Positions 18,410 through 53,943 of a stretch of 64,000 bases of DNA are shown here, piece by piece. Each line of letters starts with the position of its first letter. The stretch's first letter is position 1. The stretch lies in the IMG/VR virus record IMGVR_UViG_3300010938_000951, positions 186,001-250,000 of that record; one strand, given 5' to 3'. The notes under the pieces are model-generated. The model saw only the letters and a list, made by a program, of their open reading frames with translations. It was not told the origin of the DNA and did not search any database. Both the position numbers and the translations under genes were made by a program.

Positions 18410-20631
18410 GACCATCTAGATTATATGTAAAAGATTTTATGTGCTATGATGACGCGTATATTGATTTCTCACAATTCAATTCGGCTCTTATCATAGGCAA
18501 ATCAGATAATCCAGATGTTTCCAATGGTGTTGGCAAGACTACGCTTTTTAGAGCAATTGAATATGTTCTTTTTAATTACTCGGATGTTAATCTGGAAGAT
18601 ATTATTCGTGATGATGCTGATAAGTGCAGTGTAACTCTTGATTTTATTGTAGGTAACGAGGAATACAGAGTCACGCGCACACGCACGCGCAAGGGTACAA
18701 CCGATCTTACTCTTTACAAACGTACTGCGTTGGATGGCGAAGAAACAGAAGTATTGCATTCTATTAATGGAGATCGTTACATTCCCTTATTAGATGATGT
18801 AGAAAAATACTGGAAAGACATATCTGGACGTCGTGCCGCTGACACTGACAAAGAGTTAGCAAAACTAGTTAAGGTGAATTTGAAATCCTTTAGGATATTT
18901 ATTCACTTCTTACAACGTGATTTTGGTGGGTTAACAACAGCTACACCTGAAACGCGTAAAAAGATTTTGAAAGATGCTTTGAATTTAATTGTGTATTCAA
19001 AATTAGAAAAGCTTGCTAAAGAGAAATCGTCCGCCCTTCAAAAAGAGTCGGACAAATTTCGCACACTCATCAACAGCTTAGGGGATCCTGATGCTACTAT
19101 GGCAGAAATCTCTAGCAAATTAATAGATGTGGAAAAAGAAATTTCTAGTCGTTCACTTAAAGTTGGAGATTTAGAAGTTCAGATAAACGCAGCTAATGAA
19201 AATGTCAATAGGCTTGTTAATGAGCACTCTAATTTAGAAAGTAAATTCTCTAATTTGGTCGAGAAAGAACAATCTCTTAACGTAGAGAAAACCAAAATAG
19301 AAACATCTATTAAAGAATATACTACTAAAAAATCTAATGTTATTAAGGTTGCCCATGAGGCCGTAGCTGAGCTTAAACAATTGGAAGAAACTCAAATCAA
19401 ACTAGTTGATTTAGATTATAATCAAATAGATGTTCTTTCCGAAAAGATTGTTTCAAATAAAGAAAAAATAGCCCAACTAAGCCTTACTATTCAAAATGAT
19501 TTGGCAAGAGTCGATAAGTTAAGAAAACCTATTCCTGAAGATGGCGAATGTGAAGAATGTCGCCAACCAATTACGGCAGAACATAGAAAAATTTGCCAAC
19601 AGAAACTTGATCAGGAGTTGCGTGAGAAGCAGGTTAATATTCAGTCTTGTAAGAAGGATATTGCTGCATTGAATGCTGAAAATGCCGTTCATCAGCAAAC
19701 CATTAATACATTAACGCTTTCTAAACAGCACCTAGAAAGTATTAACAACAAAATCTCTGCCAAGAAAAAAGAAGTTACTGATAAGCGTGCCATTCATGAT
19801 GAGTATAAGGTATTATTGGATAAGTTTACCTCTGAATTAGAAGATAAAATTAAAGAGATGGATGCTATTACTGAGCAGCTTCAAAACTCTTCTGCGATTA
19901 AAGAGGCAAAAATTCTTGAAAAACAAATTCAAGAAGAGAGGCAAAAAGCAAAATCTATTGAATCACAGATTCTTATCAATAATAAAGAACTGAATCATTT
20001 TAATAGCACCAAAGCTGTTTTACAACATGATTTAAATCAAAGAATAGATGAAAAGCGCAAGAAAATAGAATATACAAAGTTGCTAAAAGAAATTGAAGAC
20101 AAGTTAGGTATGTACCCAGCAGTTGTTCAAGCTTTTTCTAGTACTGGTATTCCTAATTTGATTATACAAAATGTTCTTGATGATTTACAAATTGAGGCCA
20201 ATACATTGCTAGCTCAATTAAAACCGGGTCTACAATTATCTTTCTCAGTTGAGAAAACCGTAGAAAAGACAGGCGATCAAGCAGATACATTAGATATTCA
20301 TTATACCGTTAATGGTAAGAAACGATATTATGAAAATATTTCTGGGGCCATGCAATTAGCAGTTAACTTTAGTTTAAAGTTAGGTCTATCTTTCTTGTTG
20401 CAAAAATTAAGTGGCGTAGATGTTCGCTTCTTGTTGTTAGATGAGATTGATCAATCTTTAGATAAAGCTAGTGTAGATTTCTTTGCTGATATAGTGAAGC
20501 TCTTTTCTAAAGACTATACTATATTGGTCATTACTCATAATGATCGTTTGAAAGATAAATTCTCACATGCAGTGTTAGTGGAACAAGATATAAATATGGT
20601 ATCACGTGCGAAGGTTGTATCTTCGTGGTGA
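18406..20631 (+). CDS. sbcC: SbcC/Rad50-like SMC ATPase
   Basis: NGVGKTT, Q-loop LQRD, coiled coil with zinc hook CEEC, signature ISGA and LLLDEID. Confidence 0.92.
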   Translation: MRPSRLYVKDFMCYDDAYIDFSQFNSALIIGKSDNPDVSNGVGKTTLFRAIEYVLFNYSDVNLEDIIRDDADKCSVTLDFIVGNEEYRVTRTRTRKGTTDLTLYKRTALDGEETEVLHSINGDRYIPLLDDVEKYWKDISGRRAADTDKELAKLVKVNLKSFRIFIHFLQRDFGGLTTATPETRKKILKDALNLIVYSKLEKLAKEKSSALQKESDKFRTLINSLGDPDATMAEISSKLIDVEKEISSRSLKVGDLEVQINAANENVNRLVNEHSNLESKFSNLVEKEQSLNVEKTKIETSIKEYTTKKSNVIKVAHEAVAELKQLEETQIKLVDLDYNQIDVLSEKIVSNKEKIAQLSLTIQNDLARVDKLRKPIPEDGECEECRQPITAEHRKICQQKLDQELREKQVNIQSCKKDIAALNAENAVHQQTINTLTLSKQHLESINNKISAKKKEVTDKRAIHDEYKVLLDKFTSELEDKIKEMDAITEQLQNSSAIKEAKILEKQIQEERQKAKSIESQILINNKELNHFNSTKAVLQHDLNQRIDEKRKKIEYTKLLKEIEDKLGMYPAVVQAFSSTGIPNLIIQNVLDDLQIEANTLLAQLKPGLQLSFSVEKTVEKTGDQADTLDIHYTVNGKKRYYENISGAMQLAVNFSLKLGLSFLLQKLSGVDVRFLLLDEIDQSLDKASVDFFADIVKLFSKDYTILVITHNDRLKDKFSHAVLVEQDINMVSRAKVVSSW

Positions 20632-26020: not shown

Positions 26021-26142
26021 TGTAAGACCCACACCGTATTCCCTGGCACAGTACACGCAGTCTATCCTTAGATTGAAAATTCCCCTGAGATTGGGTAAGA
26101 TGTACACACGTGTTACAATACACAACCATATCAGGAGGTCAT

Positions 26143-29100
26143 ATGACCGACTTTGTTTCTCTGCATAATCAGACGCAGTTTTCTATTCTTGATTCAATTA
26201 TTACACCAAAGGCCCTTTTCAAACGAGCAAAAGAGTTAGGACAAACAGCGATTGCAGTTACTGATCATGGCTCTTTAGCTGGAGCCTGGGATGCCTGGAA
26301 AGCTTCAAAAGAAACTGGTGTCAAACTTATTATTGGATGCGAGTGTTATTTTCAAGATGATGCATCTAATGTTAATGAAAAGTTCCGCCATATTGTATTG
26401 TTGGCGAAGAATGCCGTTGGATATCGTAATCTTTTGACGTTAAATAAGAAAGGTTTCGATCAGAGTTCTTTTGTAGGTAAGCGCGTTTATTCTGTACTTG
26501 ATTGGAAGTTGCTGGAGCAGCATGCTGAGGGTTTAATTTGTTTAACAGCATGTGGTAATGGTATCATCAGCCAACCTATTATGAAGGGTAAAATGGATGA
26601 AGCAGAGAAAACTCTATTGCGACTTAAAGATTTGTTCGGTGATAATTTAGGTATTGAAATTCAGCCTAACAATATGAAGCGCGGTTCAAATATTTTTAAT
26701 GATGAAATCGATCAAGATTTTTTGAACAGACAATTAGTGAAGCTTGGCAAGAAACACAATGTTCGTGTTGTGGCTGCCTGTAATGCTCATTATCTAACTA
26801 AAGAAGATGCGGATGTACATGATGCATTCCTTGCTATTGGTGCGCATCAACCAAAGCATTCTGGTTTTCGTTTAAAGTATCCTGTACCAGAATTTTATCT
26901 CAAAACTGGCGATGAAGTTAAAGAGTTTTTTGCCAGAGTGTATCGCGATGACGCACAAACATTCGTTGACAATTCTGTATATTTTGCTAATCTGTGTGAA
27001 AAGCCTGAGTGGATTGATCCAAAGTTTTCCAATCCATCTGGCAAAGAGCTTCCTGTATTTCCTGTTAAAGATGAACCAGATTATCTGGAATTCCGTGACT
27101 GGGTTATTCAGCAATCAGAAAGCATTCAAAAATTAGAGGAAGACAAGCTTTTCTTACGTTATCGTTGTATTAAACGTTTTGATTCTCGTGTAAAGAACCT
27201 TACTCCAGAGCAGCGTGAACAATATAATAAACGCATAGAAGAAGAGTTAGATGTTTTAGAGTACCACGGATTCTCCAGCTATATGCTCATTGTAGCAGAT
27301 TTTATAGAATGGGCTAGAAAAAATGAAATTGCTGTTGGTGAAGGCCGCGGCTCTGTTGGTGGTTCACTAGTAGCGTATTTGCTAGGAATCCATCAAGCAG
27401 ATCCGATTAAATATAATTTGATTTTTGCTAGATTCCACAACAAAGAGAAGTCCAGCTTCCCTGATATTGATACCGACTTTGCACCGTCTGGTCGTGAAAA
27501 AGTACAAAACTATCTACGCCAGAAATATGGTGAAGATCATGTGGCGCACGTTAGTAACGTAAATACTATTACACCAAAAGTGTATGTTAAAGACATTGCT
27601 CGTATTTTTGAATTTGGCGGCTCTAAAGAGGAGGCGTTTAAGATTGGTAATGAAATCGCTAATTGTATTCCGGCGGAAATTCATTCTATTGAGGATGCAT
27701 TGGCAAAAGTTCCGCTATTTGCGGAATACGCCAAGAAATATCCAGAGTTCGAAAGATACAAGGATATCTGTGGAAAGTACCGTGCTTGGTCCACTCACGC
27801 CGGTGGTATTATCATCTCCGCTCGTCCCCTGACTGGACTTGTTCCACTCAGAAAGGATAAGGATGGAGCACTAGCTATTGAGTATGATAAGGATAAGGCC
27901 GAAGAAAATGGTCTAGTCAAAATGGATACCTTGGGCCTTTCAACTTTAGATATTATTGGCCAAGCTATGAAGCTGATCAAAGAGTCTGGAAAGACTCTTC
28001 CGGAAGATATTAATTATGACGAGTACGATCAAAGTGCTTACGATGTAATTTCAAATGGCGACACTTTCTGTGTCTTTCAGCTTGGAACATCTGGTGGAAC
28101 TATTGATTTGTGCAAACAAATCAAGCCAAGGTCTATCAATGATATTAGTTATATTAACTCACTTGCTCGCCCATCTGCTCGCGATATGAGAAAAGATTTT
28201 ATCTTAACCAAAGATGGCAAGAAACCATTCGCACTACTACATCCTACTTTGGGTCGAGCATTTAATAATACATTTGGATTTGGTCTCTACGAAGAGTCTC
28301 TAATGTATTTAGCTCAAGATGTAGCTGGTTGGAGTTTGCACTCTGCTGACCGTTTGCGAAAACTTACGAAGGAAAAAGGTAAGAATCCCAAGAAAGCTCA
28401 AGAATGGCGCGCGGAATTTATTAAAGATGCCATTGCCAACAATGTTAATGAAAATATTGCTAAACGCATTTGGGATGAGGTCGTAGATAAATTCCAGGGT
28501 TATGGTTTTAATATGTCTCACTCTATCTTGTATTCTATGACAAGTTACAAGACAGCATACTTAAAAGCACACTACCCAATTGAATTTTTAATGGCCAACT
28601 TAATGGCTGAAGTTAAGTCTAATGCACCAGATGCAAAAGGCAATATTGAGAAAATCAAAAAGGAAATTCGTAAACGTAGAGTTAAAATTGTTCCGCCTGA
28701 TATCAATAAATCACAACTCGCTTATACTATCGAAGATGGTAACAAACTAATTACTGGGCTAGATGCTATTAAATTTGTTGGTATTGATGCCATTAAGGAT
28801 ATTATTGAGAAACGACCATTTACTAGCTTCTTTGATTTTATGTCTAGAGTTAGTTCGAAAACAGTACGTGCGAATAGTATTCAGGCTTTGGCGGCATGTG
28901 GCGCGCTTGATTCCTTCGGAATTTCTCGTAAGCTAATGTATCTGTATTGTTCAGATTACCGCAAGAAACTACAAGTGTGGCTTAAAAAGCACGATCCAAC
29001 TAAAGAAGAGTTTATTTATCCTTGGCCAGCAGAACCCAATTGGTCTATGCCGGAAATATATGCTTTAGAGCATTATTACCTTGGTGAATCATTTACTTGT

Positions 29101-29655
29101 AAACCTGCGTTAGCGTATGGTAAATTTTTTGATGGTGATGCTGTGACTGTTCAAGAAATTAAACGCATGAAAGATAAGGCCAATGTATCATCAGTGAAAG
29201 GTATTATTCGCGATTTCTTTGAATTCCGTGTTAAAAAAGAGGGCAAGTATTATGGTCAAGCCATGATCAAGGCTGTCATTGAAGACAAGAATGGCGATCA
29301 ATGTACTTTAACTATTTTCCCGGATCGTTGGAAAATCGTACAAGAACGAATTCAAGAACTTAACAAAAAAGCCGAATTCGATATAGGTATAGCATTGTTC
29401 TTCTCTGGTAACACGAATTCTTATGAAGACGACATGGGAATCATATTGGATCAATTATACCACATTGCATTACCGCCCTCTCTTCCGGCCGATCTAAAAG
29501 CTAAGAAAATAAACCTTAAAGAGGCAAAAGCTAAGCTTTTCGGAGAAGTACCCGAGGAAAAACCTAAGAGTCCTCAAGAGATACTTGATCAAATAGAGGA
29601 TACTTTATATGATGAGGGTCTTATCGACTTGGATGACGAATCTGAGGATGACTGA
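26143..29655 (+). CDS. dnaE: DNA polymerase III alpha subunit (family C)
   Basis: PHP domain (TDHG, HIVLLAKN), GRGS.GGSLVAY, PDIDTDF, STHAGG, KMD.LGL and YGFN.SH; AGGAGG SD before ATG 26143. Confidence 0.97.
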   Translation: MTDFVSLHNQTQFSILDSIITPKALFKRAKELGQTAIAVTDHGSLAGAWDAWKASKETGVKLIIGCECYFQDDASNVNEKFRHIVLLAKNAVGYRNLLTLNKKGFDQSSFVGKRVYSVLDWKLLEQHAEGLICLTACGNGIISQPIMKGKMDEAEKTLLRLKDLFGDNLGIEIQPNNMKRGSNIFNDEIDQDFLNRQLVKLGKKHNVRVVAACNAHYLTKEDADVHDAFLAIGAHQPKHSGFRLKYPVPEFYLKTGDEVKEFFARVYRDDAQTFVDNSVYFANLCEKPEWIDPKFSNPSGKELPVFPVKDEPDYLEFRDWVIQQSESIQKLEEDKLFLRYRCIKRFDSRVKNLTPEQREQYNKRIEEELDVLEYHGFSSYMLIVADFIEWARKNEIAVGEGRGSVGGSLVAYLLGIHQADPIKYNLIFARFHNKEKSSFPDIDTDFAPSGREKVQNYLRQKYGEDHVAHVSNVNTITPKVYVKDIARIFEFGGSKEEAFKIGNEIANCIPAEIHSIEDALAKVPLFAEYAKKYPEFERYKDICGKYRAWSTHAGGIIISARPLTGLVPLRKDKDGALAIEYDKDKAEENGLVKMDTLGLSTLDIIGQAMKLIKESGKTLPEDINYDEYDQSAYDVISNGDTFCVFQLGTSGGTIDLCKQIKPRSINDISYINSLARPSARDMRKDFILTKDGKKPFALLHPTLGRAFNNTFGFGLYEESLMYLAQDVAGWSLHSADRLRKLTKEKGKNPKKAQEWRAEFIKDAIANNVNENIAKRIWDEVVDKFQGYGFNMSHSILYSMTSYKTAYLKAHYPIEFLMANLMAEVKSNAPDAKGNIEKIKKEIRKRRVKIVPPDINKSQLAYTIEDGNKLITGLDAIKFVGIDAIKDIIEKRPFTSFFDFMSRVSSKTVRANSIQALAACGALDSFGISRKLMYLYCSDYRKKLQVWLKKHDPTKEEFIYPWPAEPNWSMPEIYALEHYYLGESFTCKPALAYGKFFDGDAVTVQEIKRMKDKANVSSVKGIIRDFFEFRVKKEGKYYGQAMIKAVIEDKNGDQCTLTIFPDRWKIVQERIQELNKKAEFDIGIALFFSGNTNSYEDDMGIILDQLYHIALPPSLPADLKAKKINLKEAKAKLFGEVPEEKPKSPQEILDQIEDTLYDEGLIDLDDESEDD

Positions 29656-39393: not shown

Positions 39394-39834
39394 ATGGAAC
39401 GTAGAAAAAATCGCAGTGACAAATACCAGTGGGTTTTGCTTGAAACAGTTTGTTCAAATGATATGATGGAGGCGTTTTGCAATGAGGATAGTATCTCAGC
39501 AAGACTTAATCCGTTTGAATACAATGAGGACTTAATTGAATTAGAAGAGCAGCTCAAAAAAGAGTTTTGGAGGGTGGTTGATACTTTATTGACTCCAAGA
39601 CAAAGAGAAGTAATTAGACTTTATGCTGATGGCTATACCCAGATGGAGATAGCTAAAATGCTGAATGTAAATCAAAGCAGCATTACAAAAAGCCTTAACG
39701 GAAACGTAGATTATAAGAATGGAAAGAAAATCTATGGCGGGGCTAGAAAGAAAATCCGTAAGATAATTGAAAATGATGAGAAAATCAAGGATATTCTCAG
39801 CAAAATGGCAGAGTGTCGTGATGAAAAGTGGTAA
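39394..39834 (+). CDS. sigma-70 region-4-like HTH protein
   Basis: LTPRQREVIRLY..GYTQMEIAKMLNVNQSSI. Confidence 0.85.
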   Translation: MERRKNRSDKYQWVLLETVCSNDMMEAFCNEDSISARLNPFEYNEDLIELEEQLKKEFWRVVDTLLTPRQREVIRLYADGYTQMEIAKMLNVNQSSITKSLNGNVDYKNGKKIYGGARKKIRKIIENDEKIKDILSKMAECRDEKW

Positions 39835-42019: not shown

Positions 42020-42847
42020 ATGAGTGTAATTAGGTTGGCAGACCTCTTAGCGCATAAATATGAGCTGGCGTCTGAGGGAGCCGCCTCATTGCAGAGCGTC
42101 ATGCGTGATGTTGAGACTAAGATAAAAGACGCTTACAGAAATTATATTGACCTTAAGACTATTACGTCTAAAGCGTACAATGCTATTCCTATTATGGCTC
42201 ATCAGGGCGAGCCACATAGTCAAAAAATAGTAGGTCATATGCAGATTATTACTGCAAATATTAATGACCTTATCAAGCATCCCGCACGTTTATTTAAAGC
42301 TATTAATAAAGTTTTAGCTCTAATTTCTTCTTTAGACGAAGCCATTAAGAATACTAAAAAGAAGTCACCAGAGCATTTACCAACTCAACAAGTTCTTAAC
42401 GCTACATTAAGTGATTTAAGTAGACTAGAAAATTCATTAAAAAGGTTCTCTTCATTAATGGTAGGCGCTGCTAAATTACTTAAGCCATTTGTTCCGCCTG
42501 ACGAAGAAGGTAAAGGCGCAGAACTTGAAGGTGATGTAGTTGTACCAGAAGCTTTACCATTAACTAAGAATGAAAGAAGACAATTCTTTTTAATGTATCC
42601 AAATGAAGCTGCAGCTTATGGATTTACTGGACCATCTTTGATCGACAATCTAGATATTGTTCTTCAGATTTTGGAAGAGCCCGGAATGTCTAAAGAATTT
42701 GATAAATTTGTTAGAGCAATCAAGCAACAAGAGATACCTAGAAATGGTGCTTTAATTAAGGGATTAGCTGATAAAATTAGACAATTAATAGAGCGCAGAC
42801 AGACTAATGTTTCTGCATTAGAGAACAAACCAACTTTTGAGGAATAA
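42020..42847 (+). CDS. hypothetical helical protein
   Basis: 275-aa ORF in the module. Confidence 0.7.
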   Translation: MSVIRLADLLAHKYELASEGAASLQSVMRDVETKIKDAYRNYIDLKTITSKAYNAIPIMAHQGEPHSQKIVGHMQIITANINDLIKHPARLFKAINKVLALISSLDEAIKNTKKKSPEHLPTQQVLNATLSDLSRLENSLKRFSSLMVGAAKLLKPFVPPDEEGKGAELEGDVVVPEALPLTKNERRQFFLMYPNEAAAYGFTGPSLIDNLDIVLQILEEPGMSKEFDKFVRAIKQQEIPRNGALIKGLADKIRQLIERRQTNVSALENKPTFEE

Positions 42848-42858
42848 GAGGCTACACT

Positions 42859-43572
42859 ATGAGAATTTCTGAACTATTGAATGCAATGGCTTCTTGGCTA
42901 GAAAGCCCAAACAACGAAGCTCTGTTGCTTGCTGAAGCTGATGAAAAGTGCATGCAAGTAGTAGCAGAATCTTGTGTTCTAGCTGCTGCTCTGTTAAAGA
43001 AGGCGGCTGATGAAGTGGATGTTCTTGAGCCACCAAGCGCTTCTGCAATTACTCCAGAGTCAGTAGAAGAGACTGCTGCTTTAGCGCAAGCTTTAGATGA
43101 GTCCGGTGATCCACAACTTAAGAGAGTTGCGTCTGTATTAGATGAGCTTCTTTTAACTATTGCTGCCCCACCAAATGCTTACGCTGAGCGTAAAGATTTA
43201 GTCGATTCAAGAGCAGAAGAAATTAGAAAAAAGTATGAAGGGCCTCGCAAAGATTTGCACAAATATAACCAAATTGAGAAATCAGAAAAGGCCATTGAGA
43301 ACAGTGGTTTTACCAAAGAATATAAAATTCTAGAAGCCCCTCTCAGTTCACGTTACTGCCCAGACCATCCAGGTGCGCAAATTGCACGTGTAGGCGAGCA
43401 CGTATGGCAATGTGAGCTTGATAAAAAAACTTACAATTTTGAAACTGGTTTTGAATTAGCTAATGGCTCAAAGGTTCCTGGTGGAGATGTATCACAACAA
43501 ACTAATGGCTTAGATACTCCATTCCATGCAATCTTTGATACACGTGAGGGAAGACTGGGCTATAACAAGTGA
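42859..43572 (+). CDS. hypothetical protein with helical module and CPDH..C motif
   Basis: GAGG SD; LAQALDESGD; RYCPDHPG..WQCELD. Confidence 0.75.
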   Translation: MRISELLNAMASWLESPNNEALLLAEADEKCMQVVAESCVLAAALLKKAADEVDVLEPPSASAITPESVEETAALAQALDESGDPQLKRVASVLDELLLTIAAPPNAYAERKDLVDSRAEEIRKKYEGPRKDLHKYNQIEKSEKAIENSGFTKEYKILEAPLSSRYCPDHPGAQIARVGEHVWQCELDKKTYNFETGFELANGSKVPGGDVSQQTNGLDTPFHAIFDTREGRLGYNK

Positions 43573-43721
43573 TTGACCAAGAAATTGAAAACTTCACAAA
43601 GGTCATAAGAGAGGTTTTGTTACAGTTAGATCCGGAGGCGGCTCGGCTTTTCTTAGACCGTTTCACGGAGAAATTGAATGAACAAAAACGCACTCAAAAA
43701 AATTCTGGAACATCCAGATAA
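43569..43721 (+). CDS. 50-aa mini-protein not in the ORF track, paralogous to the C-terminus of the next gene
   Basis: GTGA coupling with the previous stop; MIDQEIENFTKVIREVLLQLDPEAARLFLDRFTEKLNEQKRTQKNSGTSR; 17/36 identity. Confidence 0.7.
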   Translation: MIDQEIENFTKVIREVLLQLDPEAARLFLDRFTEKLNEQKRTQKNSGTSR

Positions 43722-44436
43722 AGATGAGATTATTGCTAAATTAGTTTTGGATTATCCTCCAAAAGATATTCATGAATGGCTTGCTGGCAAATATACAAAT
43801 GTCAGTGAAGCTAAATTTGTTGTTGCTGAAAAATCAATTAAAGTATTCAAAGATAACTATCTAGACGTCTATTCCATGATCCGAGAAGACATGATGAAGA
43901 CGAAACAAGCTGTGGCTACCAGCACAGAAGAACAGCTTGAATTAGCTGTTAAAAACAACTCTACTTATAAGAGTAAGATGTTAGAATTAGCTGGTAAAGA
44001 AATAGATGTACGTCAAATGGTTGCCCATTTGTGCATTGCTATCGAAACGCGCTTAGGTCAAGTATTTGATGAAATTCAAGAGGACCCACGCAATATCAAT
44101 ACAAAGATTGATCGTGTTTTGATTGAGTATGGTGAGTTATTAGGGGGCCTTTTGGAAAAATACTATAAATTCACAGAGAACCCGGCAGATATGGTTATCC
44201 AGCACAACGTGACTTTGCAGGCTGTGGATCAGCATATTTCGGTATTTCATGATGTAATCCGAGATGTTTTGTCTCAATTAGATTTGGAAAGCTCTATGTT
44301 ATTTATGGAACTTTTTCAAGCTAAAATGGCTAAGCTAAAGGCTCCAACTCAGGAAAAACCTCTAAATACGGACATGAAATTAGCCGAAGCCAAGCTACTT
44401 AATGAAACAATTAACCAAAAGTTAAACAATCAATAA
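43678..44436 (+). CDS. possible terminase small subunit
   Basis: N-terminal HTH-like segment (HPDKDEI..KL..D..PKDI.EWL), long helices and a C-terminal IQHNVTLQ segment; upstream of TerL. The function is inferred. Confidence 0.5.
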   Translation: MNKNALKKILEHPDKDEIIAKLVLDYPPKDIHEWLAGKYTNVSEAKFVVAEKSIKVFKDNYLDVYSMIREDMMKTKQAVATSTEEQLELAVKNNSTYKSKMLELAGKEIDVRQMVAHLCIAIETRLGQVFDEIQEDPRNINTKIDRVLIEYGELLGGLLEKYYKFTENPADMVIQHNVTLQAVDQHISVFHDVIRDVLSQLDLESSMLFMELFQAKMAKLKAPTQEKPLNTDMKLAEAKLLNETINQKLNNQ

Positions 44437-46274
44437 TGCCAGAAAATAAACCTTCTAAAACTCCAATTATCGATATGCCTTCCAAAAAGCAATTGGCAAA
44501 GGTTATTGGACCTTATTCTGATAAAGAATTAGAGCTTACTCCAGAAATGGAAGAGAAGATGAAGAAGCTTATGGAGTTTTTTGATTTCTATGGAATAGAT
44601 TATAGTAAATTCAAACCAGAGTTTCTGTCATTTATAACAGATAAGAAGGCTTATCCTAATTATGATCAGTATCAATATATTGCCGGCCAACATGATTTAA
44701 AAAAATGGATGTATGCTCTGAAAGATATCCACTACAAACAAAAAGCGGGATTCCCATATCGTGAGGCTATTAAACGAGCAACTCAAGGTTGGGCGAAGAT
44801 GGAAATTTATGATTTCCTAAATTGGCTAAGGTTTTACGAAGAAGGGGCTCACATGAAATATAAGTTTGCACAAGTCTGGTATGAAAATGGTCAGCCAGGT
44901 TACTTCTTACATATAAAGCCAGATGCTCCTAAGGAGCCAGCACCTCATTACGATGCTAATGCTGTCAATGACGCTCGTGAAGAGGCAGAGCGCAGAGAAG
45001 AAAAAAGACAGCTTATTGAAAAACAACGTTCTAAGATTATAGGACGTTTGGATTCTGCGGAAAAACTTTTGCGCTCTCAAGAGGGTCAAGAGTTTGCTGG
45101 TAAAGAGTTAGAAAATTTGATGGAAGCTATTTACACTCTTAAAAAGAAAGTGCAGCTTGTTAATAAACTTAGCGTCTCTACTCGTTTGTATGAAGACATG
45201 ATCGTTCGTGAAGGAAATGTTCTTAAGCGTAATGGTTTTACCAAAGCTGCTGAAGTTTTATATTCTTTGGCTCAAACTCCTGGTGCGTCTGGAGAATCTG
45301 CTCAAGGCACACCAGAGGCTGGTGCTGTTCCACCACCATCCCCACCAGCAGATCCATCAGGAGCAGGTAATCCTGGTGCTCCCGGAGGATTACCAATGCC
45401 ACCTCCGCCAGGCGCCCCAAATATACAGACCCCTGTGGGTGGTGACCAAAATGATCCCCCTCAACCAAAAGGCATTAAAGAATTCATTGATAATATGAAT
45501 GAGGGCAATAAGACAGATGCTTCAGAATCTGATGATGAATTAGAAGTAGAAGATTCTGAAGATACATTAATGGTAACAGAAGCTCAAGCTGTTGCGCCTG
45601 TAACTCCACCGCCTCCCCCGGCCGCATTGGAAGATGTTCCAATGACAGACGCCCCTCCACCAGATAGAAATCCTCCCGCATTCGTCCCAGAGGCTACCCC
45701 TAAAGAACCAACCAAAACAGAAGAAGAGCCATTAGAAGTAACTGAAGAAGATTTGCCACCACCAGGCGGAGATACTCCTTCTGGCGGCGCTGGTGCCAGC
45801 ATAGATAGTAAAATCGATAGTGCATTTCAAAATGTAACAATGGAAGAAATTGTATCTGAATTGGAAGATATCTCTACATATTTTAAAGTGCGTGAGATAC
45901 CAAGACGTTTAGCACGTTTAGATATGATGTTTGATGCTAAGGGAATTTCAGCTTATTTCCCAAGTTTAGCTGAAGCTCAAAACAGAGCTTTGGATGCTAA
46001 CAACTATATTGCTACTCGTATTGATGATATTCTAGCCAAAGTACGTGGAGCTATGGCTACATCTGATATCGCCACCAAATTAAAAACAGATCAAGAAAAA
46101 GAAAAACAGCGCAAACAGATGAGAAAAGAGCAAGAAAATGCTGAACTTGAGGGAGCAACTCCAACAGAAAAAGAAACGCCAACAGTAGAATTAGGTGAGC
46201 TAGGAACTCCTCCGGCTCCTCCAGCAGCCCCAGCAGCTCCTCCAGCGGCCCCACCAAGACCACCAGCAGTCTAA
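44436..46274 (+). CDS. hypothetical (putative internal head) protein with long Pro/acidic linkers
   Basis: 612 aa; KKAY, KFAQ, SLAQ and TEAQ borders. Confidence 0.8.
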   Translation: MPENKPSKTPIIDMPSKKQLAKVIGPYSDKELELTPEMEEKMKKLMEFFDFYGIDYSKFKPEFLSFITDKKAYPNYDQYQYIAGQHDLKKWMYALKDIHYKQKAGFPYREAIKRATQGWAKMEIYDFLNWLRFYEEGAHMKYKFAQVWYENGQPGYFLHIKPDAPKEPAPHYDANAVNDAREEAERREEKRQLIEKQRSKIIGRLDSAEKLLRSQEGQEFAGKELENLMEAIYTLKKKVQLVNKLSVSTRLYEDMIVREGNVLKRNGFTKAAEVLYSLAQTPGASGESAQGTPEAGAVPPPSPPADPSGAGNPGAPGGLPMPPPPGAPNIQTPVGGDQNDPPQPKGIKEFIDNMNEGNKTDASESDDELEVEDSEDTLMVTEAQAVAPVTPPPPPAALEDVPMTDAPPPDRNPPAFVPEATPKEPTKTEEEPLEVTEEDLPPPGGDTPSGGAGASIDSKIDSAFQNVTMEEIVSELEDISTYFKVREIPRRLARLDMMFDAKGISAYFPSLAEAQNRALDANNYIATRIDDILAKVRGAMATSDIATKLKTDQEKEKQRKQMRKEQENAELEGATPTEKETPTVELGELGTPPAPPAAPAAPPAAPPRPPAV

Positions 46275-46282
46275 GGAGATAA

Positions 46283-47053
46283 ATGAAACTCCGTGAACTG
46301 CTTCAAGAAATGAAGAGAGTCCAGGTAAATATAGGCGCATCTACGCCGTATATTTGCGGAGGTACGCCCAGAGATAAATACATGGGCAAATTAGAAAATA
46401 TTGCAGACATAGATATGACTACTGGAGATAAAACTGTAGACTATCTATCTCAAGAATTTTATTTAACATTACGTAAAAGGTATAACGTTACTAGAAAAAC
46501 TATGGATGATGGACATAGTACGATTTTCATTGGCAGTTTGAAAATTGATTTCTCTTCAAATTTTATTGTACCAAATATTGATCAAGAGCTGGCAAAATTA
46601 GGAATTACTAAACCAACAGATATGCAACGCGAAATGTTTAGTCGTGATTTTACTTGCAACTCATTATTGCTTACTACAGATTTAAAACAAGTTTTAGACC
46701 CAACCAAAAGAGGATTCAAAGATATTAAAGATAAGAAAATACGTACTTGTTTATCACCAGAAATTACATTAACATCTAATAGAAATAGGGTGGTAAGGGC
46801 TATTTATTTAGCTTGTAAATTGGATTTCGATATAGACGATTCAATTATAGATTTTGTGCGCCAACATCCAGATTCTGTAAAAATCTCAACTGAGAAATCT
46901 ATGAATGATAAGTTGAATGAAGCGTTCTCTAGAAATCCAGAGAAGGCTGCAGCACTTATTACACAAATGAATCTCTGGAGCTATATTCCAATTACAGAAA
47001 AAGTTTATCCATATTATATAAAACAAATTAAAGGTAAAACTAATGTCGGTTAA
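46283..47053 (+). CDS. class II CCA/poly(A)-type nucleotidyltransferase (head-neck domains) with variant templating motif
   Basis: GGTPRD, DID, SRDFT.N and DP..G..D; SNRNR in place of EDxxR. Confidence 0.88.
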   Translation: MKLRELLQEMKRVQVNIGASTPYICGGTPRDKYMGKLENIADIDMTTGDKTVDYLSQEFYLTLRKRYNVTRKTMDDGHSTIFIGSLKIDFSSNFIVPNIDQELAKLGITKPTDMQREMFSRDFTCNSLLLTTDLKQVLDPTKRGFKDIKDKKIRTCLSPEITLTSNRNRVVRAIYLACKLDFDIDDSIIDFVRQHPDSVKISTEKSMNDKLNEAFSRNPEKAAALITQMNLWSYIPITEKVYPYYIKQIKGKTNVG

Positions 47054-48940: not shown

Positions 48941-49573
48941 ATGGTTAAAAATTCTAGACACCAAGGTGTCATTAGTAGACAATCTGATGAATCTTATAGC
49001 GAAGATCATTGGTTGAAGGAGTTTGAAAACAAACTTCAAAAAACCAGCGTACAGCCTCGTGGTCATAGCCTATTTGATCAGATTAGCTCCATCATGAATA
49101 CTAAATCCAAATATCCATCAGTACAAGCTGCAGTTGATGATATGATGCAGCGCAGTGGATTAACAGCTTATTTGGATAATGTTAAAACATCTACAGAAGA
49201 AACTTCAGGCAAACCAAAGAAAACCGCTCAATTAAAAGAAGACTCTAAAATTCCTGATGTAATTAAAGCTAAACCAAGCATCAAACACACTCTAGAGAAT
49301 ATTATCAGGGAAACAAGAGGAAATATTCCAGTTCCAGCTATAATTAGTCGTTTGCGAGCCCTTCATGCGGCTGATATTAGTGATGAAAGTGCTTGGGAAG
49401 ATGAGAAACTCATTCGTTTAGTTAGCAGTTGTAATCTACAAGCCAAGAAGGACAATCCTGGAAACTATGATCATTTTGATGATCTAGGTAGAGGAGACCA
49501 TTCTACTGCTGATTCTGATATTGATGCGTCCAATACTGATGCATTTAACGCTTTAATGCCTGCAAAAATTTAA
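48941..49573 (+). CDS. hypothetical (putative head) protein
   Basis: 210 aa; KKTAQ. Confidence 0.75.
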   Translation: MVKNSRHQGVISRQSDESYSEDHWLKEFENKLQKTSVQPRGHSLFDQISSIMNTKSKYPSVQAAVDDMMQRSGLTAYLDNVKTSTEETSGKPKKTAQLKEDSKIPDVIKAKPSIKHTLENIIRETRGNIPVPAIISRLRALHAADISDESAWEDEKLIRLVSSCNLQAKKDNPGNYDHFDDLGRGDHSTADSDIDASNTDAFNALMPAKI

Positions 49574-49587: not shown

Positions 49588-50091
49588 CCCAGCCTGTTTT
49601 TGAGTATTTCTAGTGGGCCTAATTACTATTTCAGGCTTATCATGTGGACAATATCCAAAAAATCCTTTAGCACAGTTGCAATTATAGCATAATAATTGAT
49701 ATTCTTCTTTAGGAAAGTTATTTTTAATTAGCCAACGGTATAATTTACCACCAGATTTCTTACCATTTTGTCGTCGATCTTCTGCACCATCATTATTTAT
49801 GTGATCAATAGTTAGAAATTCTAAGGTAGTTTCCCCACAACAAGTGCATTTGCCACCATAGGCTTCTATAATTTTTTGTTTAACACTAAGATCATAAACT
49901 CTTTGTTGTTCTCTTATTATTTCTTTTCTATTTGTATATCTTCTTTTGCTATATTCTTTACAACAAAAGATACACATATATTTAGCCTGTTTAATATCGG
50001 AAGGTCTAGTATTATCTTTAGTTAGGCTTTTGAAGCATACAGTGCAGCTTTTGCCTTCAAAACTATATTGTCGTTTTTTCTTATCTGTCAT
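49585..50091 (-). CDS. His-Me finger (HNH-like) endonuclease with N-terminal zinc finger, inverted
   Basis: CTVC and CIFC; YGGKCTCCGE..LTIDHINNDG..YQLLCYNCNCAK. Confidence 0.88.
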   Translation of the reverse strand: MTDKKKRQYSFEGKSCTVCFKSLTKDNTRPSDIKQAKYMCIFCCKEYSKRRYTNRKEIIREQQRVYDLSVKQKIIEAYGGKCTCCGETTLEFLTIDHINNDGAEDRRQNGKKSGGKLYRWLIKNNFPKEEYQLLCYNCNCAKGFFGYCPHDKPEIVIRPTRNTQKQAG

Positions 50092-50117
50092 GGGTATATT
50101 TCAGAATATATCCATGA
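50088..50117. promoter_or_regulatory. palindrome TCATGGGTATATT-tcag-AATATATCCATGA containing both divergent start codons; candidate bidirectional promoter
   Basis: 13-bp arms with one mismatch; G(A/G)TATAT lies 14 nt before each ATG. Confidence 0.7.
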
Positions 50118-51991
50118 ACAATGATACTTATAAAGAAATGTTTTATAGGTTTAAGGATAAGCTAGCTAATCTTGATCCGGTAGAATTTTGCCAGAAACAT
50201 TTAACACTTGAAGGAGAGCCATTTTCTCTCGTAGGCAACGGGTATAAACCTTTCAGCGATATCTATAGATACATTGGAATTAAGGCATTAGAAAAAGATT
50301 CTAAACCAGTTATTCTAGTAAAGGGACGTCAGGTAGGTGCTACTACCATGGCAAGCGCCCTTGAAATGTATTTCATGGGCTCTGGTTTATTTGGAGATGG
50401 ATTCCGTCCACCAATTCGTGTTATTCATGCTTTTCCTCAATTAGAATTAGCGGCAGCTTATTCAAAAACTAAACTCAATCAAATGATTTCTCAGGCTAAA
50501 ATCCCTGAGGGAGCCGTAGAAAATAAAGCATCTCGTCCAAAGTCTTTCATGCAGCAATTGCTTGATACTACGACTGCTACTAATGACTCTTTACATTTTA
50601 AACAATTCTTGGGCGGAAATCACTTGTGGATTGAATCTACTGGTGTAGATGCCGACAGAATCATGGGTCGTACCGCTGATATCATATTTTTTGACGAGGT
50701 ACAGAAAACTACCAGTGTAGCTATTGGAAACGCGCTTAAAATTTTAACCAACGCCAAATATGGTAAGCCAACTAAAGGCGTACAAGTATTTTTTGGAACG
50801 CCACGTCGTAAGGGATCTGATTATCATAAGATGTGGCAATCATCATCTCAGCAGTATTATTATCTTGGATGCGAAAAATGCGAAAAGCATTTTCCTCTTT
50901 ATACTCCAGGTTCTGATGATTGGGAAAAAGTTTGGATTCACGGTATGATTGTTAAATGTACCCATTGTGGTCATGAACAAGATAAACTACAAGCACAAGA
51001 ACGTGGTAAGTGGGTTCCGCTAAAAGATCCAAACGATCCAGATTGCGCAATGGTTGGGTTTCATATTAACCAACTTTACATGCCAAAATTTACACGAGAA
51101 GATATTGAAAAAGAAAAGCCTGGTAAACATCCGATCAACACAGAGCGCGTTTTTCAAAATGAGGTTCTTGGAGAGTTTTATCAAGGTGATGCTACCCCAA
51201 TGTCTCCAGAAGACATTCGTGTAAATTGTGCCGATTTCGAAAGAAAATTTAGCCCTCGTATTTTGCCAGCTAAAGGTGTAACGCAACAATTAACTGTACT
51301 TGGAATCGACTACGGTGCACGTTCAGATTTGGAACAACTAGCAGACCCAGAAAGAGTAAGACCAGCAGGACAATCTTATAGTACAGCAGTTGTATTACAA
51401 ACAAAAGGCCCAAGTATACTATCAATTGAGTTTGCTACCAAATTTAAACGAAATGACATAGAAAGCAAAAAAGGTATAATTGATCAGTTGATGAGACAGT
51501 ACAGTATACAATTGGCTATTGGAGACATTGGTTATTCTAATGACTTCTCATCTCTATTGCATAATACATACGGAGATAGATACTTAGTGTCTCGTGCTCA
51601 TAATAAAGTTAATGAGCATGTTAAGTTCAATCATGAAGCTTTTCCAAAAGAAATTGTTTTTGAAAGAGATTTTTATATTAGTGAACTTTACGATCAAATG
51701 AAAAAAGGATTAGTTAGGTTTCCATATGGCGATTATGAGAAAATCGCATGGCTTATTGATCATTGTTGTAGTATGGAATTAAAACCATCTATTTCTAAAT
51801 ATGGAGATCATACAGTACATTATGTTAAAGGCGGCACTCCAAACGATGGATTTATGGCATTATTAAATGCTTATTTGGCCTATAAATTCCTGGTAAGTCG
51901 AGGGTTTACAAATAATAATCCAACATTACACAATACTAAAAACTTGACGAAACCTATGGTAATTACTGGCTATGTACCTAGGAAGTTCTAA
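50114..51991 (+). CDS. terL: terminase large subunit
   Basis: VKGRQVGATT, FFDEVQ, FGTP, CEKC/CTHC, GIDYG, DIGY and NDG..ALLNAY. The start is ATG 50114, not 49946. Confidence 0.92.
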   Translation: MNNDTYKEMFYRFKDKLANLDPVEFCQKHLTLEGEPFSLVGNGYKPFSDIYRYIGIKALEKDSKPVILVKGRQVGATTMASALEMYFMGSGLFGDGFRPPIRVIHAFPQLELAAAYSKTKLNQMISQAKIPEGAVENKASRPKSFMQQLLDTTTATNDSLHFKQFLGGNHLWIESTGVDADRIMGRTADIIFFDEVQKTTSVAIGNALKILTNAKYGKPTKGVQVFFGTPRRKGSDYHKMWQSSSQQYYYLGCEKCEKHFPLYTPGSDDWEKVWIHGMIVKCTHCGHEQDKLQAQERGKWVPLKDPNDPDCAMVGFHINQLYMPKFTREDIEKEKPGKHPINTERVFQNEVLGEFYQGDATPMSPEDIRVNCADFERKFSPRILPAKGVTQQLTVLGIDYGARSDLEQLADPERVRPAGQSYSTAVVLQTKGPSILSIEFATKFKRNDIESKKGIIDQLMRQYSIQLAIGDIGYSNDFSSLLHNTYGDRYLVSRAHNKVNEHVKFNHEAFPKEIVFERDFYISELYDQMKKGLVRFPYGDYEKIAWLIDHCCSMELKPSISKYGDHTVHYVKGGTPNDGFMALLNAYLAYKFLVSRGFTNNNPTLHNTKNLTKPMVITGYVPRKF

Positions 51992-52068: not shown

Positions 52069-53943
52069 ATGGCTGGTATTAAAAAATCGGGATTAGGAGA
52101 TCATCCGTCCTTTTCAGCAAAGTTCTTACAGGGCAGATCCACCACCCCTCAAGTAAGTGCTATTATGGCTCAGGGTGTTTCTGGAGAAAGAAGAGTTATT
52201 CTTTCAGACGAAGTAGACCAAGGATATTTTAGAGACGGTTCTGGGCCAAGTTTAAATAAAATGGCACTAAATTCTCCCACAAGTGCTTCAAATGTAGTCT
52301 CTTCAGTGGGTTTCAAGAAAAATGCTCAAGTAGTTTCTTCAGTTGGAGGAATGTTTCGTGGTATTCATGGAGATTCCGTTAAGCAAACTCCTGAAGTATA
52401 TTCCCCTCTTTGGCTTAATAGTAATCTAAACCTTCCCAGGGACCGTGCAACAATCAATGCATGGTGTCGTAGCTTTTTTGCTTTAAATCCATTTGTACAC
52501 AATGCTATTAGTTTACATAGCACTTATCCTATTAGCAAGCTTTCTATTAAATGTCCAAACAAAGATATTGAAAAATTCTTTGATGATATGATTGAAGAAA
52601 TTGATTTAATGAATATTTGCGTACAAATTGCCCAAGAATATTGGCTTTTAGGAGAAGCATTTGTTTATGCAGAATTAGATGAAGGTAAAGGCAAGTGGAG
52701 TCGCCTACACATTCAGAATCCAGATTTTATGCTTGTCAAACGTACGGTTGTAGCAAGCGAACCAATCATCATGCTTCGTCCTGATGAAAACCTCAAAAAA
52801 ATTATTTTCTCAAATCGTCCAACTGATATTGAACAACGTAAACAATTAAATCAACACATCATTGATTCTGTTAGACGTGGTGAAAATATTCCACTAGACA
52901 ATTTCCACGTATCACATTTGGCTCGTCGTATTAGTCCATACGAAATCAGAGGCACAGGATTACCTGTTTGTATTTTCCGTCAGTTAATGTTATTCGACAA
53001 ATTGCGTGAATCTAAATATGCACAGTCTGATAATATGATCAATCCATTGACTTTGGTTAAGATTGGTTCGGCTGATTATAAGCCAACTTTTGCTGACCTA
53101 GAAGCTTGGAGAAGTGTATTTGAAGAAGCGCAGTACGATAAAGACTTTAAGATATTTACCCATGAAGGAGTAGCGGTTGAAAGAGTAGGTTGGGGACAGG
53201 GAATCTATGATATCTCTGGAGATATTACTCAGCTACTTAAAGAAATTTTTATTGGGTTATTCGTACCACCTGTTATGATGGATGGTGGCGATACTACCAC
53301 TTATGCTAATGCTGGTGTAGCTTTGGACGTTCTTCGTCAGAGGTACATGCAGTTCCGTAACATGATGTCCATTTGGTTAAAGAATAAGATTTTTGCTCCA
53401 ATCTCCAAAATTCAAGGGTTTTATGACTACTCTGGTGGAGAGAAACAACTTATTGTTCCTGAAATTGATTGGAATCACATGTCATTATTTGATGCTGGAG
53501 ATTATATCAATAGTTTAATGACATTATCTCAAGGACAAGCGGATCAAAAGAGAGTATCTATTCATACTCTTTATCGTTCATTGGGTCTTGAGTACGAAGA
53601 TGAAGTACGTAAAATGCGTAAAGAAAATATTCAAAATGCAATTGCTAAGAAAGAAATTGCCGCGTTAGATCAAATGGATCTAAATGCTCTTCGTGCTTTG
53701 GATGATGAGGATGAAATTCCAGAACCAAAACAACCGGGTGCTGGACAAGAACAACCAGTACCAGGAGAGATGCCAGGAGGAGCACCGGGTGGATTACCAG
53801 ATTTGGGTCTACCAGGCGGTGGCCCTCCACCACCTCCACCACCAGGTGGCGGTGGACCTCCACCACCACCTCCTCCGCCACCAGAAGGCGGTCCACCAGG
53901 CGGTGGACCTCCAGCAGGCGGAGCACCTCCACCAGCTCCATAA
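52069..53943 (+). CDS. portal protein with Pro/Gly-rich C-terminal tail
   Basis: Follows TerL; WCRSFF..NP.V.NAI, HLARR.SPYE.RG..LP and PLTLVKIG portal-type motifs; GAGG SD. Confidence 0.85.
   Translation: MAGIKKSGLGDHPSFSAKFLQGRSTTPQVSAIMAQGVSGERRVILSDEVDQGYFRDGSGPSLNKMALNSPTSASNVVSSVGFKKNAQVVSSVGGMFRGIHGDSVKQTPEVYSPLWLNSNLNLPRDRATINAWCRSFFALNPFVHNAISLHSTYPISKLSIKCPNKDIEKFFDDMIEEIDLMNICVQIAQEYWLLGEAFVYAELDEGKGKWSRLHIQNPDFMLVKRTVVASEPIIMLRPDENLKKIIFSNRPTDIEQRKQLNQHIIDSVRRGENIPLDNFHVSHLARRISPYEIRGTGLPVCIFRQLMLFDKLRESKYAQSDNMINPLTLVKIGSADYKPTFADLEAWRSVFEEAQYDKDFKIFTHEGVAVERVGWGQGIYDISGDITQLLKEIFIGLFVPPVMMDGGDTTTYANAGVALDVLRQRYMQFRNMMSIWLKNKIFAPISKIQGFYDYSGGEKQLIVPEIDWNHMSLFDAGDYINSLMTLSQGQADQKRVSIHTLYRSLGLEYEDEVRKMRKENIQNAIAKKEIAALDQMDLNALRALDDEDEIPEPKQPGAGQEQPVPGEMPGGAPGGLPDLGLPGGGPPPPPPPGGGGPPPPPPPPPEGGPPGGGPPAGGAPPPAP

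What the first reader, a model, noticed from the sequence alone, without database searches (positions are those of the whole stretch)
43569..44436. Unannotated 50-aa mini-paralog of the putative TerS C-terminus, overlapping its start
Seen: the apparent gap between two genes is an open frame starting at GTG 43569 (GTGA coupling). IDQEIENFTKVIREVLLQLDPEAARLFLDRFTEKLN aligns with VDQHISVFHDVIRDVLSQLDLESSMLFMELFQAKMA near the end of the 43678 protein, 17/36 identical, with hydrophobic positions kept and DNA well diverged. It runs 44 nt into the parent gene. Inference: a stand-alone oligomerisation or TerL-docking helix pair acting as a dominant-negative or stoichiometry regulator of packaging.
Basis: partly seen in the sequence, partly recalled or inferred. 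Interest (0 to 1): 0.7.

Follow-up and report, generated by a model that had tools for sequence, protein, structure and literature searches.

The report
Small copy of neighbour gene's helix pair
A 50-codon gene in a huge soil phage is a real, evolutionarily maintained but dispensable mini-copy of a two-helix module of the gene it overlaps; that larger gene could not be shown to be a small terminase, and what the mini-protein does is still inferred rather than shown.

Summary
ORF 43569..43721 (50 aa, GTG inside the GTGA stop/start overlap with the upstream gene) matches residues 183-221 of the downstream 252-aa protein (18/39 identical, E 4e-9). A profile of 21 minis finds only those two places in the 267-kb genome. 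The ORF is not a decayed relic. It is intact in 9 distinct related loci and 13 gene-called clusters. Indels are in frame, start codons differ, and third codon positions vary most. In deep comparisons synonymous sites are saturated while pN is 0.18-0.42. All minis form one clade, so a single old duplication is the simplest origin. The gene is accessory: 11 of 59 related loci carry it. Elsewhere the slot holds a short spacer or homing-endonuclease genes. The TerS label is not supported. There is no Pfam, PHROG or PDB match, and hhalign against Mu gp27 is negative. In every locus whose flank reaches TerL, five genes lie between the parent and TerL. Only language-model features hint at a TerS-like HTH. 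The binding or dominant-negative idea stays untested: the complex prediction gave no verdict. One unexplained point remains. Among close relatives the mini core is nearly identical in DNA, while the flanking genes are close to synonymous saturation.

The parts
43569..43721 (+). Mini-ORF, 50 aa. Predicted two-helix hairpin plus a tail whose sequence is dictated by the overlapping parent codons.
   Evidence: Intact homologues in 9 distinct loci and 13 protein clusters (alignment A2).
43569..43572 (+). GTGA: the mini start codon overlaps the stop codon of upstream gene 42859..43572, an arrangement known to allow translational coupling.
   Evidence: In relatives the mini start likewise abuts, overlaps or lies within about 20 nt of the preceding ORF's stop (GTGA, TAATG, ATGA, or a start inside the preceding ORF's last codons; in L008 an ATG follows 18 nt downstream).
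43572..43679 (+). Region homologous to the parent helix pair (mini residues 2-37).
   Evidence: BLASTP; alignment A2; profile hit.
43608..43727 (+). Stretch of unusually high DNA identity (90-100% to L001 and L007; 87-93% to L057, 77-93% to L008) spanning the mini core and the first codons of the parent.
   Evidence: Sliding identity. Mini core pS 0-0.13 against 0.6-0.7 in flanking genes.
43667..43670 (+). GGAG Shine-Dalgarno-like motif for the parent gene, lying inside the mini coding sequence.
   Evidence: Read directly from the sequence.
43678..43721 (+). 44-nt overlap of mini and parent in different frames. The mini stop TAA lies within the parent's conserved D14-K15 codons.
   Evidence: The overlap is 44 nt in 8 of 9 loci and 47 nt in L025.
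43678..44436 (+). Parent gene, 252 aa. All-helical: a small N-terminal HTH-like domain, a long antiparallel helical hairpin (95-166), a helix pair (180-218) and a C-terminal helix. Function unknown.
   Evidence: Model m909083cbbf46, pLDDT 87. Family of 246 representatives.
44224..44331 (+). Parent helix pair (residues 183-218), the segment the mini duplicates. It is conserved across the whole family.
42859..43572 (+). Upstream gene (237 aa, unknown function) whose stop overlaps the mini start.
48941..49573 (+). 210-aa gene that sits directly upstream of TerL wherever both are within the fetched locus. By position it is a better TerS candidate than the parent, but it has no family hit.
49946..51991 (+). 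Terminase large subunit.
   Evidence: PF05876 at 7.7e-14; phrog_675 at 3.9e-59.

Best explanation
The ORF is a real, protein-coding accessory gene of a clade of huge soil and groundwater phages. It came from a single old partial duplication of the conserved helix pair (residues about 183-218) of the 252-aa HTH/coiled-coil protein encoded just downstream. Its start abuts or overlaps the stop of the preceding ORF and its end lies 44 nt inside the parent, an arrangement that would allow coupled translation; no + strand promoter or terminator signal lies between them. Shown: homology, intactness, protein-level constraint over deep divergence, single origin, patchy distribution. Inferred: the roughly 35-residue helical hairpin acts like a microProtein. 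It would occupy the surface that the parent's own helix pair normally contacts, either within the parent oligomer or on the parent's partner, and so tune assembly or partner binding. As a side effect, its translation runs through the parent's ribosome-binding site and start codon.
For: Homology: E 4e-9; profile E 8e-11, the only second hit in the genome. Coding: zero stops in the mini frame against 0-6 in the other two frames in 9 loci, with at least one stop in one of them in every locus; pairwise differences by codon position 0.33/0.26/0.48. Indels are all in frame and starts vary between GTG, ATG and TTG. Thirteen further intact versions exist in public gene calls. Selection: in deep pairs pS is 0.75-1.0 and pN 0.18-0.42. 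Single origin: 9 minis against 39 parent segments split at support 98/97; 21 minis against 128 family segments at SH-aLRT 100. The duplicated segment is one of the best-predicted parts of the parent (pLDDT about 96) and is conserved family-wide. Start/stop abutment with the preceding ORF is kept in nearly every context. No + strand promoter or terminator signal lies in 42700-44600.
Against: There is no direct evidence of translation or of binding; the complex prediction gave no verdict. The gene is missing from about 48 of 59 relatives, including ones with 92-94% identical parents, so it is dispensable. Among the closest relatives nonsynonymous changes are not depleted: 3-6 nonsynonymous against 0 synonymous in the core, and pN 0.34-0.5 in the first 12 codons. 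The near-identity of core DNA among close relatives could instead reflect a nucleotide-level element. The parent's function is unknown, so 'what is being tuned' is undefined.
Confidence: 0.45

Rival explanations
1. The ORF acts in cis as an upstream coupling ORF. Its translation, started by coupling to the upstream gene and running across the parent's Shine-Dalgarno motif and ATG, sets how much parent protein is made. On this view the peptide itself is unimportant.
For: Stop/start abutment with the preceding ORF is kept in nearly every context, and the mini always ends 44-47 nt inside the parent. Relatives without the mini carry a different spacer with an AGAGG ribosome-binding motif and a TATAAT-like box (read by eye in the sequences printed), which implies a different regulation of the parent.
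Against: The amino-acid pattern is conserved where synonymous sites are saturated, and that pattern is the parent's own domain. The conserved end point is forced by the parent's invariant P13-D14 and K15 codons, so it is not independent evidence. No significant RNA structure was found (z -0.85).
Confidence: 0.2
2. The ORF is a leftover of a partial tandem duplication or a recombination scar at a recombination hotspot. It is open by chance or only weakly selected and has no function of its own.
For: Patchy distribution: at least 7 changes on the parent tree, 2 of them forced by well-supported branches. The same junction carries homing-endonuclease genes or other inserts in other relatives. The first 12 codons evolve fast, and omega is about 1 or higher among the closest relatives.
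Against: 22 distinct versions are all intact and all indels are in frame. New start codons have been acquired in different contexts. pN is well below pS in deep comparisons, and stops are present in at least one other frame in every locus.
Confidence: 0.12
3. The conserved 43608-43727 stretch is mainly a nucleic-acid element, such as an operator for the HTH parent, a promoter or 5' leader, or a packaging site. It would have derived from an internal parent segment, and the open frame would be secondary.
For: Core DNA is 90-100% identical to L001 and L007 (87-93% to L057), with pS of about 0, in relatives whose flanking genes have pS 0.6-0.7. The changes seen there (3-6 nonsynonymous, 0 synonymous) fit a uniform low rate.
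Against: In the divergent mini lineages (L010, L016, L025, L047) the DNA is only 37-67% identical but the protein pattern is kept. No promoter-like site on the + strand and no significant RNA fold were found. A recent recombinational spread of the cassette explains the same data.
Confidence: 0.1
4. Mini and parent are joined by a programmed +1 frameshift, or by a homopolymer sequencing error, at the A7 run 43698-43704. That would give the parent an N-terminal copy of its own helix pair.
For: An A7 run lies in the overlap in the window, and removing one A would fuse the frames.
Against: In most mini-bearing relatives the run is interrupted (CTCAAGAAAAT). The parent's ATG and its MNKNALKKIL N-terminus are conserved in relatives without the mini. 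No relative shows a fused frame.
Confidence: 0.03

Closest known systems
microProteins (miPs) of plants and animals (e.g. Id, LITTLE ZIPPER, miP1a/b; PMC9638782, PMC4807768)
   Same: A small single-domain protein that is evolutionarily derived from one domain of a larger multi-domain protein, and so could pair with that protein or its partners.
   Different: Those are eukaryotic, their domain is a proven interaction domain, and binding is shown. Here the setting is a phage, the mini is encoded directly upstream of and overlapping its parent, and neither the interaction role of the helix pair nor any binding has been shown.
Nested in-frame phage products (Mu protease I / scaffold Z as annotated in AF083977; lambda C/Nu3, from my own knowledge)
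   Same: The phage makes both a full-length protein and a separate polypeptide corresponding to part of it.
   Different: Those arise from an internal in-frame start within one gene. Here a diverged duplicate (about 46% identical) lies upstream in another frame, and it is present in only some relatives.
Rpp of E. coli PICIs, a small protein that binds phage TerS and redirects packaging (PMC6739421)
   Different: Rpp is encoded by a satellite and is not reported as a TerS paralog (my reading of the abstract only). Here the parent is not shown to be TerS, and the mini belongs to the phage itself.
Terminase small subunits with an N-terminal HTH and a helical-hairpin oligomerisation core (architecture from my own knowledge; Mu gp27 / PF11985 used as the test case)
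   Same: The parent model has a small N-terminal helical domain followed by a long antiparallel hairpin. Language-model features of residues 1-95 point to the Mu_Gp27, Terminase_5 and DUF2280 families.
   Different: No profile or fold match, and the gene is not adjacent to TerL in any locus that reaches TerL.

Membership tests
Terminase small subunit (TerS) | Sequence or profile membership in a described TerS family (Pfam or PHROG terminase-small families, e.g. Phage_Mu_Gp27) | tested here: not met
   No Pfam or PHROG hit for the parent or for 33 and 90 family members. PF11985 is absent from the genome. hhalign of the family against the Mu gp27 family gives probability 0.15%.
Terminase small subunit (TerS) | N-terminal helix-turn-helix DNA-binding domain | tested here: inconclusive
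   The model shows five short helices in residues 3-61 with pLDDT 87-98. 5 of 90 members give weak HTH_38 or HTH_28 hits. Language-model features score 0.81-0.90 to the Mu_Gp27, Terminase_5 and DUF2280 clusters, which the tool rates as leads only.
Terminase small subunit (TerS) | Fold match to solved TerS structures or ring-forming oligomerisation core | tested here: not met
   Foldseek against PDB, BFVD and AFDB, and VIA-align wide, return only generic helical hairpins (best Z 9.4, below the level the tool calls meaningful for helical proteins). One 'Terminase' row in AFDB has E 0.88. Oligomeric state was not modelled.
Terminase small subunit (TerS) | Gene adjacent to the large terminase gene (usual, not universal) | tested here: not met
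   Five genes and 5.5 kb lie between the parent and TerL. The gene order is the same in all 59 loci, and this spacing holds in every locus whose flank reaches TerL; g210 sits directly upstream of TerL wherever both are present.
Terminase small subunit (TerS) | Binds TerL and recognises the packaging site | not testable with these tools
   Needs biochemistry.
microProtein-type regulator | Small single-domain protein homologous to one domain of a larger protein | tested here: met
   46-65 aa. The homologous region matches parent residues 183-221.
microProtein-type regulator | The shared domain mediates protein-protein contacts, and the small protein binds the large one or its partners | tested here: inconclusive
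   The complex prediction of parent plus mini gave no verdict (score 0.14, mark 0.32). No experimental data exist.
Leader or upstream ORF acting only in cis | The peptide sequence is unconstrained; only the act of translation matters | tested here: not met
   The peptide core is conserved with pN 0.18-0.42 where pS is saturated. A cis effect in addition to the peptide's own role is not excluded.
Nested in-frame C-terminal product | Internal in-frame start within the parent gene | tested here: not met
   The mini lies upstream of the parent, in another frame, and its DNA has diverged from the parent segment.

The most novel reading that the evidence does not exclude
The mini is a phage-encoded microProtein that travels as a small recombining cassette among related huge phages. 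It would interfere with the helix-pair contacts of the conserved HTH/coiled-coil protein. That could serve either to self-tune packaging or DNA handling, or as a weapon against the homologous protein of co-infecting relatives. The second idea is prompted by two observations: the mini keeps the family-typical 'AIRE..L..DPE' sequence while the resident parents carry a derived 'VIRDVLSQLDLESS' form, and the cassette core is far younger or more conserved than its flanks.
Probability: 0.1. Interest if true: 0.75.

Novelty: new variant of a known kind. Interest (0 to 1): 0.45.

Why it matters
Small phage genes are routinely missed or dismissed. Here comparative data show that a 50-codon ORF overlapping two neighbours is a maintained gene, and that it is a stand-alone copy of one module of the adjacent protein. 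If the mimicry mechanism holds, it would extend the microProtein principle, in which a truncated paralog titrates its parent, to phages. It would also give a handle on a conserved but uncharacterised 250-aa protein family of huge phages. The case also shows how a homing-endonuclease hotspot can hold alternative small cassettes in otherwise collinear genomes. It does not at present say anything about terminase biology.

Tried and rejected
1. Complex prediction of parent plus mini: no verdict (score 0.14 against a mark of 0.32). I do not use it as evidence either way.
2. First parent model from 33 close sequences (pLDDT 68): Foldseek against PDB and BFVD and VIA-align wide were uninformative.
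3. Deeper model (pLDDT 87): PDB, AFDB clusters, ESM atlas and VIA-align wide gave only family members or generic hairpins.
4. Pfam on 33 and 90 family members and profile searches of PDB sequences gave only noise, including CHMP1a at E 0.004 over a helical stretch.
5. hhalign against the Mu gp27 family was negative.
6. A recurrent weak tblastn hit of the mini about 4.4 kb upstream in relatives did not reproduce in the window, where that position falls in or near the primase gene. I dropped it as chance.
7. Frameshift extension of the upstream gene is rejected. The mini's frame relative to g237 differs between loci (-1 in the window, +1 in L025), and in L010 another ORF lies between them.
8. 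Short 'C-terminal fragment' proteins in the family search (P0157 and others) look like gene calls on broken contigs, not further minis.
9. RNA fold and promoter/terminator scans of the region showed nothing above shuffles.
10. Laying public runs on the region showed both alleles (mini, and a replacement spacer) in metagenomes, and one contig from an RNA library spanning the mini. That cannot prove transcription.
11. My first parent dN/dS run used a wrong frame offset. I corrected it; only the g237 values are used.

Full report
**Setting**

The window is part of a 267-kb virus record. Its relatives are IMG/VR contigs of up to 480 kb. Reads matching this stretch come mainly from soil and groundwater metagenomes. 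Genes run on the + strand and are tightly packed. Around the finding the order is: primase (38555), g146, g154, g532, g275, g237 (42859..43572), the mini-ORF, the 252-aa 'parent' (43678..44436), g612, a CCA-adding-type nucleotidyltransferase, g250, g358, g210, TerL (49946..51991), and portal (52069..53943). This order is the same in all 59 related loci.

**The observation**

- The ORF 43569..43721 is there as described.
- Its GTG shares bases with the TGA of g237 (GTGA).
- It ends at a TAA 44 nt inside the parent, in the frame one base ahead of the parent's.
- BLASTP gives 18/39 identities to parent residues 183-221, E 4e-9.
- A profile built from 21 mini sequences finds only two places in the whole genome: the mini itself (2.9e-31) and the parent helix pair (8e-11).

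The homology is therefore real.

**Is it a gene?**

The search for related loci returned 59 loci. tblastn and direct reading show the mini in 11 of them, 9 distinct: L001-3, L007, L008, L010, L016, L025, L047/48 and L057.

- In every one the frame is open. The other two frames carry 0-6 stops, with at least one stop in one of them in every locus.
- Length differences are in-frame.
- The start is a GTG in GTGA, an ATG in TAATG or ATGA, an ATG inside the end of an inserted 83-aa ORF (L010), or a TTG/GTG inside the end of g237 (L025).
- A search of 5.8 billion proteins found 13 more clusters of 46-65 aa, all intact.
- Pairwise differences per site by codon position are 0.33, 0.26 and 0.48.
- Between the deep lineages (window against L010, L016, L025), synonymous sites are saturated (pS 0.75-1.0) while pN is 0.18-0.42.

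This is the signature of a protein-coding sequence kept by selection over a long time, not of a decaying fragment. The conserved core reads IREVLSQLDPEAAQLFLDRFTEKLNEQK (A2). The last 14 residues are dictated by the parent's conserved MNKNALKKILEHPDK codons. The mini's stop lies in the parent's D14-K15 codons.

**Origin**

In a tree of the 36-residue segment, 9 minis separate from 39 parent segments at support 98/97. With 21 minis and 128 segments from the wider family, the minis are one clade at SH-aLRT 100. One duplication is therefore the simplest history.

The sister group is not resolved (AU p 0.23 for minis plus local parents). The mini consensus is about as close (47-53%) to distant family members, which read 'EAIRE.L.E.DPE', as to the local parent, which reads 'VIRDVLSQLDLESS'.

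**Distribution**

- The mini is absent from about 48 of 59 loci, including L004/5/6/9 whose parents are 92-94% identical to the window's.
- On the parent tree its presence needs at least 7 changes, 2 of them forced by well-supported branches.
- Where it is absent, the g237|parent junction holds one of three things. Some loci have a 19-67-nt spacer with an AGAGG ribosome-binding motif and a TATAAT-like box (my reading of the sequences). Others have a longer unrelated spacer. L017-20, L023, L035 and L051 have free-standing endonuclease genes (phrog_559 and phrog_681, E down to 5e-45, with DUF4379 zinc fingers), and L024 has what looks like a short remnant of one.
- Public metagenome contigs show both alleles. 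Some replace 43547/43570/43575..43678 by 47-67 other letters, and others span the mini.

The mini is thus one of several alternative occupants of a recombination hotspot.

**An unexplained pattern**

Among the window, L001, L007, L008 and L057, the flanking genes are close to synonymous saturation (g237 pS 0.55-0.67, parent 0.61-0.72). Yet codons 13-36 of the mini show pS 0-0.13, with 3-6 (11 for L008) nonsynonymous changes. DNA identity peaks at 43608-43727. The first 12 codons are the opposite: pS 0.27-0.88 and pN 0.34-0.48, and in the protein clusters this part varies widely in length and sequence.

Either the core was spread recently by recombination among these phages, or it also carries a nucleotide-level function. 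No promoter, terminator or significant RNA fold was detected. I cannot decide between the two explanations.

**What is the parent?**

- It belongs to a family of 246 representatives, almost all about 250 aa.
- With 90 sequences AlphaFold gives pLDDT 87. The model has five short helices (3-61), a helix 64-81, a long antiparallel hairpin (95-135, 142-166), the helix pair (180-200, 203-218; pLDDT about 96) and a last helix (231-251).
- Nothing in Pfam, PHROGs or PDB sequences matches.
- Fold searches return only family members or generic hairpins.
- Language-model features of the whole protein, and more clearly of residues 1-95, point to Phage_Mu_Gp27, Terminase_5 and DUF2280 clusters at 0.81-0.90. 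The tool itself rates these as leads.
- I tested the lead. PF11985 does not hit the genome. A profile-profile comparison of the family with 21 Mu gp27 relatives gives probability 0.15%.
- By position, g210, not the parent, is the gene directly upstream of TerL wherever the locus reaches it.

The architecture (HTH, hairpin, C-terminal helices) is compatible with a small terminase, from my own knowledge of TerS structures. It is equally compatible with other DNA-binding oligomers. I put TerS at roughly 0.3.

**Mechanism**

Shown:
- The mini is a selected, separately encoded copy of a well-folded, family-wide conserved helix pair.
- Its start abuts the preceding ORF's stop, it overlaps the parent, and no + strand promoter or terminator signal separates the three genes.

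Inferred:
- It works by mimicry of that helix pair, as microProteins do (PMC9638782, PMC4807768). That would compete for the surface the pair contacts in the parent oligomer or in a partner.
- Because its translation passes over the parent's GGAG (43667-43670) and ATG, it probably also affects how much parent is made.

The single complex prediction gave no verdict and counts for nothing either way.

Rivals, in order of my estimate:
1. A purely cis-acting coupling ORF (0.2).
2. A functionless scar (0.12).
3. A nucleic-acid element with an incidental frame (0.1).
4. A frameshift fusion at the A7 run (0.03). The run is interrupted in most relatives and the parent's own start is conserved.

**Novelty and verdict**

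Its headline label (TerS) is not supported and its function remains a hypothesis.

Truncated paralogs that regulate their parents are known in eukaryotes, and phages are known to make nested partial products. A diverged, stand-alone, overlapping mini-copy that is polymorphic in a phage population is a new variant of that theme. I did not find a described phage example in a limited literature search. Interest is moderate.

Noticed in passing
L017:4990-5721, L023:4037-4987, L035:5103-6008, L051:5032-5949; possible remnant L024:5843-5953: The junction between g237 and the parent gene carries free-standing endonuclease genes (phrog_559 'HNH endonuclease', phrog_681, repeated DUF4379 treble-clef zinc fingers) in several relatives. 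It is therefore a homing-endonuclease insertion hotspot. The L024 remnant was recognised by eye only.
   Followed up: partly
window 42020-42847 (g275): This gene is hypervariable. Relatives whose neighbouring genes are 80-98% identical have only 25-30% identity here, or no detectable match. It has a weak phiKZ internal-head-protein hit (E 0.02).
   Followed up: no
window 39394-39834 (g146): Unusually conserved small protein: 80-98% identity in most relatives (53-72% in the four most distant loci), clearly higher than its neighbours in nearly all of them.
   Followed up: no
window 44238-44267: A 30-nt stretch inside the parent's helix pair is 100% identical in L001, L007, L008 and L010, although the gene's synonymous sites are otherwise near saturation. 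pS of the helix-pair codons is 0.22-0.58 against 0.6-0.78 for the whole gene.
   Followed up: partly
L010:5766-6017: An extra 83-aa ORF with no family hit lies between g237 and the mini. The mini's ATG overlaps its end.
   Followed up: partly
window 44436-46274 (g612): A 612-aa protein with long proline-, alanine- and glycine-rich low-complexity linkers and acidic stretches. Its start overlaps the parent's stop (ATAATG). It has no family hit, and its length is variable across relatives.
   Followed up: no
window 43698-43704: An A7 homopolymer lies in the mini/parent overlap. It is present in the window and in a few relatives, but is interrupted by G in most mini-bearing relatives.
   Followed up: yes
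window 46283-47053; 26110-29655; 7191-8993; 18406-20631: The phage encodes a CCA-adding-type nucleotidyltransferase, a DNA polymerase III alpha subunit, a type IA topoisomerase and an SbcC/Rad50-like ATPase. This fits a very large phage genome.
   Followed up: no
G000 (whole record): IMG/VR classes the 267-kb record as 'provirus' with 62% completeness, whereas collinear relatives are 340-480-kb contigs. The label may be an artefact.
   Followed up: no
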